A stretch of 63,776 nt of DNA, the filler included, from Octopus bimaculoides (lineage: Eukaryota), in the NCBI RefSeq assembly GCF_001194135.2. It is 6 parts of 6 records of this genome, joined end to end, with 100 filler letters (N's around TTAATTAATTAA, not from the genome) between each part and the next. Parts side by side here need not be neighbours in the genome. Positions count along the whole stretch, not along the records: positions 33,686 to 62,609 come from NC_068995.1; 5 more parts are not named here. One strand, given 5' to 3'. The notes below the pieces were generated by a model that was given only the letters and a program-made list of their open reading frames with translations, was not told the origin of the DNA and made no database searches. The position numbers and the translations under genes were made by a program. This document shows, in pieces, positions 43,025 to 43,366 of the stretch (position 1 is its first letter; each line of letters opens with the position of its first letter).

Positions 43025-43366
43025 CAGATGTCAATTCATTACGCCCGTTTCAAGCGACCCCTTTAATTGATTAATGAAAACATTATATCATTTGAAAGAA
43101 ACCGTCCTCCTCAGATGACCGCATAGACTTCAAACATAAATGATACAAACATGTCCTTAACATATTCGCATCAATAATGGAACTCAAAATATTTACATAT
43201 ATTTTCAGTTCCATAATTGAAGCGAATATGTTACGAAAATGGTTCTATCCTTTACGTTTGAAGTCTATGCGGTCATCTGACGAGAACGGTTTCTCTTAAA
43301 TTATGTAATATTTTCGTTAATCAATTAAAGGAGTCGCTTGAAACGGCCGTAATGAATTAACACATG
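43025..43366. mobile_element. 342 bp imperfect palindrome with one hammerhead core per arm
   Basis: Arms of about 160 bp. Plus arm: TCAT-CTGACGA (43277-83)-N56-GAAAC-GGCC-GTA-ATGA (to 43355). Minus arm: TCAT-CTGAGGA-N56-GAAAC-GGGC-GTA-ATGA (43118 to 43036). Confidence 0.75.

What the first reader, a model, noticed from the sequence alone, without database searches (positions are those of the whole stretch)
43025..43366. Palindromic element with two outward-facing long-stem-II hammerheads
Seen: it looks like an ordinary TA-flanked palindromic MITE, but each arm has TCAT-CUGANGA, a 56 nt self-complementary spacer, GAAAC-GG(C/G)C-GUA and ATGA completing stem I. The spacer length is close to the 61 nt of the sequence-unrelated motif at 8913. 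Inference: this is a separate family with the same ribozyme architecture, produced by inverted duplication of a Penelope-type terminal repeat. Transcription from either strand would give a self-trimming RNA and a long dsRNA.
Basis: partly seen in the sequence, partly recalled or inferred. Interest (0 to 1): 0.75.

Follow-up and report, generated by a model that had tools for sequence, protein, structure and literature searches.

The report
Inverted retroelement ends carrying hammerhead motifs
This 386-bp palindrome is most likely two old, truncated copies of a hammerhead-ribozyme-bearing retrotransposon end joined head to head, which is a known arrangement for Penelope-like elements and not a new kind of mobile element.

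Summary
The sequence features are real, but the borders are wrong. The palindrome spans 43003-43388: 190-nt arms, 25 differences, 6-nt centre.

Each arm carries, on its outward-reading strand, a complete type I hammerhead core: TCAT / CUGANGA / 56 nt / GAAA / C-GGCC-G / UA|AUGA. The core plus helices I and III is expected 0.07 times per piece by chance. Adding the end-to-end pairing of the spacer (12/13 and 11/13 positions) brings this to about 1e-5.

Deviations from a canonical hammerhead:
- 10.1-11.1 is G.U, with an A.C mismatch two pairs in.
- The hammerhead fold is 10-13 kcal/mol above the minimum free energy (MFE).
- Rfam finds nothing, but it also misses a canonical minimal hammerhead (min-HHR) nearby.

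A second, unrelated palindrome (41754-41884) holds a canonical Penelope-type minimal hammerhead in the same outward-facing layout. It has no TA flanks, and its arms end at the predicted cleavage site.

Best reading (0.6): head-to-head 5'-truncated 3' ends of a Penelope-like or retrozyme-type element. The copy is decayed and probably inactive. A full transcript would form a -214 kcal/mol hairpin, not a self-trimming RNA. No other copies could be retrieved, so family-level tests remain open.

The parts
43003..43192 (-). Left arm of the palindrome. Read on the minus strand it runs from the centre outward (5' to 3').
   Evidence: the repeat finder I1; blastn self-hit 43003-43388 reversed, 86 %; alignment A1.
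43193..43198 (.). 6-nt centre between the arms.
43199..43388 (+). Right arm of the palindrome. It has 25 differences from the left arm over 190 nt.
43273..43355 (+). Right-arm hammerhead motif.
- Helix I 5' strand: 43273-76.
- CUGACGA: 43277-83.
- Helix II / 56-nt spacer: 43284-43339.
- GAAA: 43340-43.
- C15.2: 43344.
- Loop GGCC: 43345-48.
- G16.2: 43349.
- U16.1 and A17: 43350-51.
- Predicted cleavage between 43351 and 43352.
- Helix I 3' strand: 43352-55.
   Evidence: Regex parse; descriptor scan; ACGGCCGU is self-complementary, duplex -14.1 kcal/mol.
43036..43118 (-). Left-arm hammerhead motif.
- TCAT: 43118-15.
- CUGAGGA: 43114-08.
- Spacer: 43107-43052.
- GAAA: 43051-48.
- C: 43047.
- Loop GGGC (no longer palindromic): 43046-43.
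- G: 43042.
- UA: 43041-40.
- Predicted cleavage between 43040 and 43039.
- AUGA: 43039-36.
   Evidence: The spacer folds into a 23-bp rod, -10.9 kcal/mol.
43352..43388 (+). 37 nt between the predicted cleavage site and the end of the right arm. The mirror segment is 43039-43003 on the minus strand. Its length fits the 30-40 bp 'tail' described for Penelope-like insertions.
   Evidence: Arm similarity stops at 43388 / 43003. The tail is described in PMC8557442 and PMC11167929. Assigning this segment as a tail is inference.
43199..43272 (+). 74-nt inner segment of the arm, upstream of the hammerhead (mirror: 43192-43119). No assigned function. It carries the 25-nt block GTTTGAAGTCTATGCGGTCATCTGA, which is identical in both arms and runs into the core.

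Best explanation
The locus is an old, single insertion. It consists of two 5'-truncated copies (about 190 nt each) of the 3'-terminal region of a hammerhead-bearing retroelement, joined head to head so that both 3' ends, and both hammerheads, point outward. The parent would be a Penelope-like element (pseudo-LTR) or one of its non-autonomous retrozyme-type derivatives.

In the parent element the type I hammerhead has a very short helix III with a palindromic loop. It would act as a dimer in tandem transcripts to process element RNA.

The inverted structure would arise at integration. Either reverse transcription is primed from both nicked target strands, or the cDNA snaps back on itself. Either route gives a near-perfect palindrome with a few-nucleotide centre (inferred).

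Since insertion, or partly before it, the arms have diverged by 13 %.

At this locus the ribozyme is probably not functional. If transcribed, the element would give a long imperfect hairpin RNA, not a self-trimmed product.

Shown: the palindrome, the motif, its non-randomness, and a second independent example nearby. Inferred: the Penelope/retrozyme parentage, the integration mechanism, and the inactivity.
For: (1) The hammerhead core is complete in both arms. All invariant positions are kept, and the only core difference is at the free position N7.

(2) The motif is expected about 1e-5 to 6e-5 times by chance (0.071 x 1e-4 to 9e-4).

(3) Helix II pairing is strand-specific. Pairs number 12/13 and 11/13 on the hammerhead strand against 7/13 and 9/13 on the complement, because half the pairs are G.U. 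This points to an RNA-level structure.

(4) Arm-to-arm differences inside helix II are 7 transitions to 1 transversion, against 4:11 elsewhere (Fisher one-sided p = 0.008). Three of the six differences at paired positions keep the pair.

(5) Helix I of 4 bp, and helix III of 2 bp plus a palindromic tetraloop, match published metazoan and Penelope-type hammerheads (PMC4209133; PMC7229834; PMC6765202).

(6) Published Penelope-like element (PLE) anatomy fits. There is an HHR near the 3' end, an inverted 5'-truncated copy adjacent, a 30-40 bp tail, and insertion near microsatellites (PMC8557442). Dual HHRs 100-700 bp apart on opposite strands are reported (PMC4209133). A PLE protein cleaves and extends both target strands in vitro (PMC11167929).

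(7) Internal control: a second palindrome at 41754-41884 has a canonical min-HHR. It shows the extra nucleotide after A9, G10.1-C11.1, a 5-bp helix II and CG at 15.2/16.2. The strict descriptor is expected 0.002 times per piece. It has the same outward-facing layout, its arms end within about 2 nt of the predicted cleavage site, and there is no TA on the right flank.

(8) The 13 % arm divergence rules out an assembly or library palindrome artefact.
Against: - No reverse transcriptase, GIY-YIG or any other domain was found in the ten longest non-repetitive open frames of the piece, so there is no direct link to a PLE.
- No second copy exists in the 29-kb piece. Nothing was found in metagenome, viral or prokaryote-genome collections beyond one chance hit.
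- Family consensus, covariation and target-site duplications are therefore untested.
- No target-site duplication of 4 nt or more is visible at the junctions.
- G10.1-C11.1, highly conserved in published PLE hammerheads, is G.U here. An A.C mismatch follows at 10.3-11.3.
- There is no unpaired nucleotide after A9.
- A 56-nt helix II lies outside published descriptors (4-8 bp; 'half-core' cases 35-50 nt).
- Rfam gives no hammerhead hit even at E <= 10. This test is uninformative, because the canonical min-HHR at 41788-41753 is missed too.
- Both arms break off at exactly the same internal point. This needs a snap-back or symmetric event, not two independent truncations.
Confidence: 0.6

Rival explanations
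1. A DNA-transposon MITE: a palindromic, TA-flanked element moved by a Tc1/mariner-type transposase. The hammerhead-like motif would be either a coincidence or a passenger captured from a retroelement.
For: - The whole element is one long inverted repeat with an AT-rich sequence.
- TA dinucleotides sit at the ends of the true palindrome (43004-05 and 43386-87).
- There is no visible variable-length target duplication.
- Sub-threshold Rfam hits go to MITE-like plant miRNA hairpins, for example MIR7993 at 54.6 bits against a threshold of 100.
Against: - The TA at the ends cannot be told apart from the palindrome itself.
- The three-helix hammerhead is very unlikely by chance, and its helix II is G.U-rich and strand-specific. 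A DNA-level inverted repeat does not explain that.
- The neighbouring palindrome with a canonical min-HHR has no TA on one side and ends at the cleavage site.
- No transposase remnant was found in the piece.
Confidence: 0.15
2. A solo hammerhead-bearing retroelement fragment that was later duplicated in inverted orientation by a DNA-level fold-back (replication or repair template switch). In this case the arms would include some non-element flanking DNA.
For: - The junction is perfectly symmetric with only 6 nt between the arms, which is typical of hairpin-mediated inverted duplications.
- The arms continue 37 nt past the predicted cleavage site.
Against: - Two independent hammerhead palindromes lie within 1.6 kb. 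This argues for a mechanism intrinsic to the element.
- Inverted adjacent copies are a documented product of PLE integration.
- The transition bias confined to helix II is not expected from purely post-duplication neutral decay.
Confidence: 0.12
3. A host hairpin-RNA gene (a long hpRNA, endo-siRNA or miRNA-like precursor). In this reading the hammerhead resemblance is irrelevant.
For: - The whole element folds into a 190-bp imperfect hairpin of -213.7 kcal/mol.
- There are weak Rfam matches to miRNA precursor models.
Against: - All Rfam matches are far below their gathering scores and go to unrelated plant and animal families on both strands. That is the behaviour of any AU-rich hairpin.
- No conservation or expression data are available.
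- This reading does not explain the hammerhead core.
Confidence: 0.05

Closest known systems
Minimal type I hammerheads in the pseudo-LTRs of Penelope-like elements (Cervera & de la Pena 2014, PMC4209133; Craig et al. 2021, PMC8557442)
   Same: - Type I topology.
- Helix I of 4-5 bp.
- Enlarged helix II.
- Very short helix III with palindromic 15.2-16.2 and loop, implying action as a dimer.
- Position near the element's 3' end.
- Frequent solo or truncated copies.
- Pairs on opposite strands 100-700 bp apart.
- Inverted 5'-truncated partner copy.
- 30-40 bp tail.
   Different: - Helix II is 56 nt (up to 23 bp) instead of 6-8 bp.
- 10.1-11.1 is G.U, not G-C.
- There is no extra nucleotide after A9.
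- No RT/GIY-YIG frame or pseudo-LTR context is present here.
- Homology to any PLE is untested.
Metazoan non-LTR retrozymes (Cervera & de la Pena 2020, PMC7229834; Li, Clavereau & Pollet 2026, bioRxiv 10.64898/2026.07.22.740005)
   Same: - Small, AT-rich, non-coding units of a few hundred nt, each carrying one type I hammerhead.
- Helix III is a 2-bp stem plus tetraloop, as in invertebrate retrozymes.
- They are proposed to derive from PLE pseudo-LTRs.
- Solo monomers are dispersed in genomes.
   Different: Retrozymes are defined by head-to-tail tandem repeats that give circular RNAs. Here the two units are inverted, so no transcript carries two sense ribozymes.
'HHR_half_core' cases in Naiad PLEs (Craig et al. 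2021, PMC8557442)
   Same: The CUGANGA and GAAA boxes are separated by an unusually long distance (35-50 nt) in the 3' region of a PLE, and so do not fit standard descriptors.
   Different: Here the spacing is 56 nt, and helices I, II and III can all be drawn. Naiads were reported to lack canonical hammerheads.
Tc1/mariner-derived (Stowaway-like) MITEs
   Same: Short, AT-rich and non-coding. The whole length is an inverted repeat, with TA at the ends.
   Different: MITEs are not known to carry ribozyme cores. TA duplication, multi-copy status and a transposase parent could not be shown. The neighbouring analogous palindrome is not TA-flanked.

Membership tests
Hammerhead ribozyme, type I | Conserved core C3 U4 G5 A6 N7 G8 A9 ... 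G12 A13 A14 A15.1 ... U16.1 H17 | tested here: met
   Present in both arms. The only difference is at N7 (C versus G)..
Hammerhead ribozyme, type I | Helix I formed by the sequences flanking the motif (open-ended) | tested here: met
   UCAU/AUGA, 4 bp, in both arms. There is no extension beyond 4 bp.
Hammerhead ribozyme, type I | Helix II closing directly on the core, with G10.1-C11.1 | tested here: not met
   G10.1 is present, but 11.1 is U (a G.U pair) and 10.3-11.3 is A.C. Further out, pairing is 12/13 (left arm) and 11/13 (right arm)..
Hammerhead ribozyme, type I | Match to curated covariance models (Rfam Hammerhead families) | tested here: inconclusive
   No hit at gathering score or at E <= 10. 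The canonical min-HHR at 41788-41753 is also missed, so this test lacks power for this class.
Hammerhead ribozyme, type I | Site-specific self-cleavage after H17 | not testable with these tools
   Thermodynamics are unfavourable for the monomer: the HHR fold is -1.2 / -7.0 kcal/mol against an MFE of -14.3 / -16.8.
Penelope-like element (as a fragment of one) | Short helix III with palindromic 15.2-16.2 and loop 3 (dimeric hammerhead) | tested here: met
   The right arm has ACGGCCGU, a perfect 8-nt palindrome (duplex -14.1 kcal/mol). The left arm has ACGGGCGU, which is degenerate.
Penelope-like element (as a fragment of one) | Unpaired nucleotide between A9 and 10.1 | tested here: not met
   No register with an extra nucleotide gives a helix. 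The neighbouring element at 41788-41753 does have it.
Penelope-like element (as a fragment of one) | Reading frame with reverse transcriptase and GIY-YIG endonuclease, flanked by pseudo-LTRs | tested here: not met
   There is no long frame in or next to the palindrome. Pfam finds nothing in the ten longest non-repetitive open frames of the piece. This is expected for a solo truncated insertion, so it does not exclude descent from a PLE.
Penelope-like element (as a fragment of one) | Inverted 5'-truncated partner copy; 30-40 bp tail beyond the main end | tested here: inconclusive
   The inverted partner is present. The 37 nt beyond the cleavage site has the right length, but it cannot be identified as a tail without other copies.
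Penelope-like element (as a fragment of one) | Sequence homology to a PLE consensus of the same genome | not testable with these tools
   No eukaryotic genome or repeat library is available. Collection scans were empty.
Non-LTR retrozyme | Head-to-tail tandem repeats, each with a hammerhead | tested here: not met
   The two units are inverted. There is no direct copy in the piece.
Tc1/mariner-type MITE | TA target-site duplication at the true ends | tested here: inconclusive
TA is present at 43004-05 and 43386-87 but belongs to the palindrome.
Tc1/mariner-type MITE | Many copies with conserved terminal inverted repeats matching a transposase-encoding parent | not testable with these tools
   There is one copy in 29 kb and no genome to search.

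The most novel reading that the evidence does not exclude
The arms represent an undescribed hammerhead family with a rod-like helix II of about 23 bp. Its almost purely transitional (mostly A/G) divergence would reflect selection on, or A-to-I editing of, the RNA before reverse transcription. Head-to-head hammerhead palindromes in this genome would then be fossil records of where reverse transcription started. In the neighbouring element that point is exactly the ribozyme cleavage site, and here it is 37 nt downstream of it (the 'tail'). That would be genomic evidence that hammerhead-cleaved RNA serves as a template in vivo.
Probability: 0.15. Interest if true: 0.55.

Novelty: new member of a known kind. 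Interest (0 to 1): 0.3.

Why it matters
If the reading is right, the locus adds little that is new in kind. Hammerheads in Penelope-like elements and their inverted truncated insertions have been described since 2014.

Three modest points are of interest.
1. The hammerhead has a helix II far longer than current search descriptors allow. Genome surveys built on those descriptors (and on Rfam) would therefore miss such families.
2. Two independent outward-facing pairs lie within 1.6 kb. One ends at the predicted scissile bond. Inverted insertion junctions could thus be mined genome-wide to map reverse-transcription start sites of these poorly understood elements.
3. Such palindromes are potential sources of long hairpin RNA.

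Tried and rejected
- Rfam scans at gathering and at E <= 10. No hammerhead hits, only sub-threshold generic miRNA hairpin matches. I rejected these as evidence either way, because the canonical min-HHR is also missed.
- Search for further copies. blastn against the piece found only the self and inverted hit.
- A core-anchored pattern in metagenome contigs gave one hit, L001. It has no other similarity and a non-palindromic loop, so it is a chance match.
- Viral contigs gave 0 hits. Prokaryotic genome contigs gave 0 hits.
- A protein word search with the two mirror ORFs (40 and 43 aa) found nothing.
- An exact look-up of the flanking 116-aa ORF found nothing on record.
- Full-text searches for the sequence strings returned only unrelated primers.
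I replaced it with the ten longest stop-free, non-repetitive frames, which gave no RT, endonuclease or transposase domain.
- Target-site duplication search at both palindromes found nothing of 4 nt or more at the junctions.
- Nested-insertion idea (a TA-flanked inner MITE inside another sequence). Rejected, because the outer 22 bp on the two sides are themselves 20/22 complementary.
- Assembly-artefact palindrome. Rejected, because the arms differ at 25 positions.
- A third motif at 45639-45721 has a 5-bp helix I but no helix II closure and no inverted partner. I treated it as chance.
- Two papers (Arkhipova 2017; Lunse 2016) were not held.

Full report
**What is in the sequence.** The piece (33686-62609) is AT-rich (about 23-39 % G+C per 2-kb window; the low values partly reflect N gaps). 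It is 10.6 % N and packed with microsatellites. It contains no convincing long reading frame. It looks like draft invertebrate-type eukaryotic DNA, but the organism could not be identified.

At the finding there is a long inverted repeat. Its arms are 43003-43192 and 43199-43388: 190 nt each, 25 differences (86-87 % identity), and 6 nt between them. The TA dinucleotides taken as flanks are therefore internal. TA also occurs at the true ends (43004-05, 43386-87), but there it is part of the palindrome. The 13 % arm divergence excludes an assembly or library artefact.

**The hammerhead motif.**
- Right arm, + strand, 43273-43355: UCAU CUGACGA [56 nt] GAAA C GGCC G UA | AUGA.
- Left arm, - strand, 43118-43036: UCAU CUGAGGA [56 nt] GAAA C GGGC G UA | AUGA.

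In hammerhead numbering, all invariant core positions are present. Helix I is 4 bp. Helix III is A15.1-U16.1 plus C15.2-G16.2 capped by a tetraloop. In the right arm, A15.1 to U16.1 reads ACGGCCGU, a perfect 8-nt palindrome (self-duplex -14.1 kcal/mol). In the left arm a C-to-G change gives ACGGGCGU (-3.3 kcal/mol). A short helix III with a palindromic loop is the published hallmark of metazoan type I hammerheads that cleave as dimers, including those of Penelope-like elements (PMC4209133; PMC7229834; PMC6765202).

**Is it more than chance?** A descriptor asking only for the core, a 4-bp helix I and a short helix III, with any spacer of 4-100 nt, is expected 0.071 times per piece in 1000 dinucleotide-preserving shuffles. 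On its own that would not be decisive.

The spacer ends add the weight. Counting from the core outward, 12 of 13 (left arm) and 11 of 13 (right arm) positions pair when G.U is allowed. The frequencies in composition-matched shuffled sequence are 1e-4 and 9e-4. The real piece gives higher background, but only because of its microsatellites. Combined, the expectation is about 1e-5 to 6e-5. These thresholds were set after seeing the motif, and the two arms are copies of one sequence, so they count once.

Half of the helix II pairs are G.U. The helix therefore exists on the hammerhead strand (12 and 11 pairs) but much less on the complement (7 and 9 pairs). In the better-preserved left arm the whole spacer can form a 23-bp rod with three small interruptions and a 4-nt loop. 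The right arm keeps 20 of those 23 pairs.

By folding energy alone the spacer is unremarkable: z = -1.48 and +0.16, and z = -0.30 and +0.04 for 101-nt segments. 'Self-complementary spacer' is therefore only partly borne out.

**Deviations from a working hammerhead.**
- The pair next to the core is G10.1.U11.1 instead of the highly conserved G-C.
- 10.3-11.3 is an A.C mismatch.
- The unpaired nucleotide after A9 that is typical of Penelope-type motifs is absent (PMC4209133).
- With the hammerhead fold imposed, a 91-nt segment reaches only -1.2 kcal/mol (right) or -7.0 (left), against unconstrained minima of -14.3 and -16.8.
- A transcript of the whole element folds into one hairpin of -213.7 kcal/mol.
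- Because the two motifs lie on opposite strands, no single transcript holds two sense copies. The cis dimer that such ribozymes need cannot form.

I therefore consider self-trimming at this locus unlikely.

Rfam finds no hammerhead at gathering score or at E <= 10. It also fails on the canonical minimal hammerhead described next, so this negative carries no weight. The sub-threshold miRNA-family matches (best 54.6 bits against a threshold of 100) are what any AU-rich hairpin gives.

**A pattern in the arm differences.** Of the 25 arm-to-arm differences, the 8 inside helix II are 7 transitions and 1 transversion. The 15 outside the hammerhead are 4 transitions and 11 transversions (Fisher one-sided p = 0.008). 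The two remaining differences, at N7 and in loop 3, are both transversions at unpaired positions.

Transitions are the changes that G.U-tolerant helices absorb, and three of the six changes at paired positions keep the pair. Five of the eight are A/G on the sense strand.

This is a small sample. It suggests that part of the divergence arose under RNA-level constraint, or through RNA editing before reverse transcription. That in turn implies the arms may descend from two slightly different template RNAs rather than from pure post-insertion decay. This is inference.

**A second, independent example in the same piece.** A relaxed scan picked up a motif on the minus strand at 41788-41753:

cac CUGAAGA a GGCUG gagaguacaa CAGCC GAAA CG UA | gug

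This is a textbook Penelope-type minimal hammerhead. It has the extra nucleotide after A9, G10.1-C11.1, a 5-bp helix II, a palindromic CG at 15.2/16.2 and no loop 3. Its unconstrained MFE is the hammerhead fold. A strict descriptor is expected 0.002 times per piece (500 shuffles).

It is one arm of another palindrome, 41754-41810 / 41828-41884 (57 nt, 82 %, 17 nt between). The other arm carries a dead copy on the plus strand (GUUAUGA box, CAACC in helix II). So the layout is again head-to-head and outward-facing, in a sequence unrelated to the first.

Here arm similarity stops within about 2 nt of the predicted scissile bond. The right junction is not TA-flanked, and there is no target duplication of 4 nt or more. 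This internal comparator makes an element-intrinsic, retro-type origin of such palindromes much more likely than a TA-duplicating DNA transposon.

**Best explanation and how it works.** Published anatomy of Penelope-like elements fits on several counts.
- Hammerheads lie near the 3' end in the pseudo-LTR.
- Most copies are heavily 5'-truncated.
- A 30-40 bp 'tail' may extend the end.
- Insertions favour microsatellites (PMC8557442). The left flank here is a (TATG)n / (CATA)n tract.
- Pairs of minimal hammerheads 100-700 bp apart on opposite strands were noted in Schistosoma (PMC4209133).
- A purified Penelope-like protein nicks and extends both target strands, and starts reverse transcription at two internal sites that delimit the tail (PMC11167929).
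- Animal retrozymes, which are small tandem hammerhead units, are argued to be non-autonomous derivatives of these pseudo-LTRs (bioRxiv 10.64898/2026.07.22.740005).

I therefore read 43003-43388 as two about-190-nt 3'-terminal fragments of such an element, joined at their truncated 5' ends. They would have been produced in one integration event by priming on both strands or by cDNA snap-back. The symmetric junction with a 6-nt centre favours the latter or an equivalent event. The 37 nt between the cleavage site and the arm end (43352-43388) has the length of a tail. Confidence is 0.6, and parentage and mechanism are inferred. What is shown is the palindrome, the motif, its non-randomness and the neighbouring analogue.

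**Rivals.**
- A TA-flanked MITE with a coincidental or captured motif (0.15).
- A later DNA-level fold-back duplication of a solo fragment (0.12).
- A host hairpin-RNA gene (0.05).

Each is set out in the structured fields with what would refute it.

**What could not be done.** No other copy of either element could be retrieved. There is none in the piece. Only one chance match turned up in metagenome contigs. There was nothing in viral or prokaryotic genome collections, nothing by protein word search of the mirror ORFs or exact ORF look-up, and nothing in full-text searches. No RT, endonuclease or transposase domain is detectable in the ten longest non-repetitive open frames of the piece. Family consensus, covariation, copy number, target-site behaviour and linkage to an autonomous element all remain open. 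They need the source genome.

**Verdict.** It is a new member of a known kind, with an unusually long helix II that would escape standard descriptors. Interest is modest.

Noticed in passing
window 41754-41884 (arms 41754-41810 / 41828-41884): A second, sequence-unrelated palindrome with outward-facing hammerheads. The minus-strand copy (41788-41753) is a canonical Penelope-type minimal hammerhead, expected 0.002 times per piece. The plus-strand copy (41850-41885) has a mutated CUGANGA box. The arms end within about 2 nt of the predicted cleavage site, and there are no TA flanks.
   Followed up: yes
window 45639-45721 (+): A third hammerhead-like string: cugcu CUGAGGA [70 nt] GAAA UA agcag. 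Helix I is 5 bp, but there is no helix II closure (3 of 8 pairs), no helix III and no inverted partner. It is probably chance.
   Followed up: partly
window 34705-34873, 43906-44074, 36392-36559, 36826-36985; also 34073-34129, 41091-41147, 50190-50246; and 47525-47635, 58023-58133, 60025-60216: Several dispersed repeat families of about 60-190 nt at 75-88 % identity, in both orientations. They look like SINE-type interspersed repeats. One copy lies about 500 bp to the right of the palindrome. They were not characterised.
   Followed up: no
window 43177-43299 (+) and 43083-43214 (-): Mirror-image small ORFs of 40 and 43 aa (MELKI...KSMRSS...). Each starts at an ATG just across the palindrome centre and runs into the CUGANGA box. 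They are 68 % identical. No homologue was found by word search. They are most likely a by-product of the palindrome.
   Followed up: partly
window 42858-42881 and 42884-42944: A 24-N assembly gap and a (TATG)15 microsatellite lie 60-145 bp to the left of the palindrome. The left context may be incompletely assembled. Overall, 10.6 % of the piece is N.
   Followed up: no
window 41191-41268: A tandem duplication of a 38-nt unit (2.1 copies, 87 % matches) lies next to one of the dispersed repeats.
   Followed up: no
window 43284-43339 versus 43107-43052: Differences between the two helix II copies are almost all transitions (7 of 8, five of them A/G on the sense strand). The rest of the arms differ mainly by transversions. 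This is compatible with RNA-level constraint or A-to-I editing before reverse transcription. The sample is small.
   Followed up: partly
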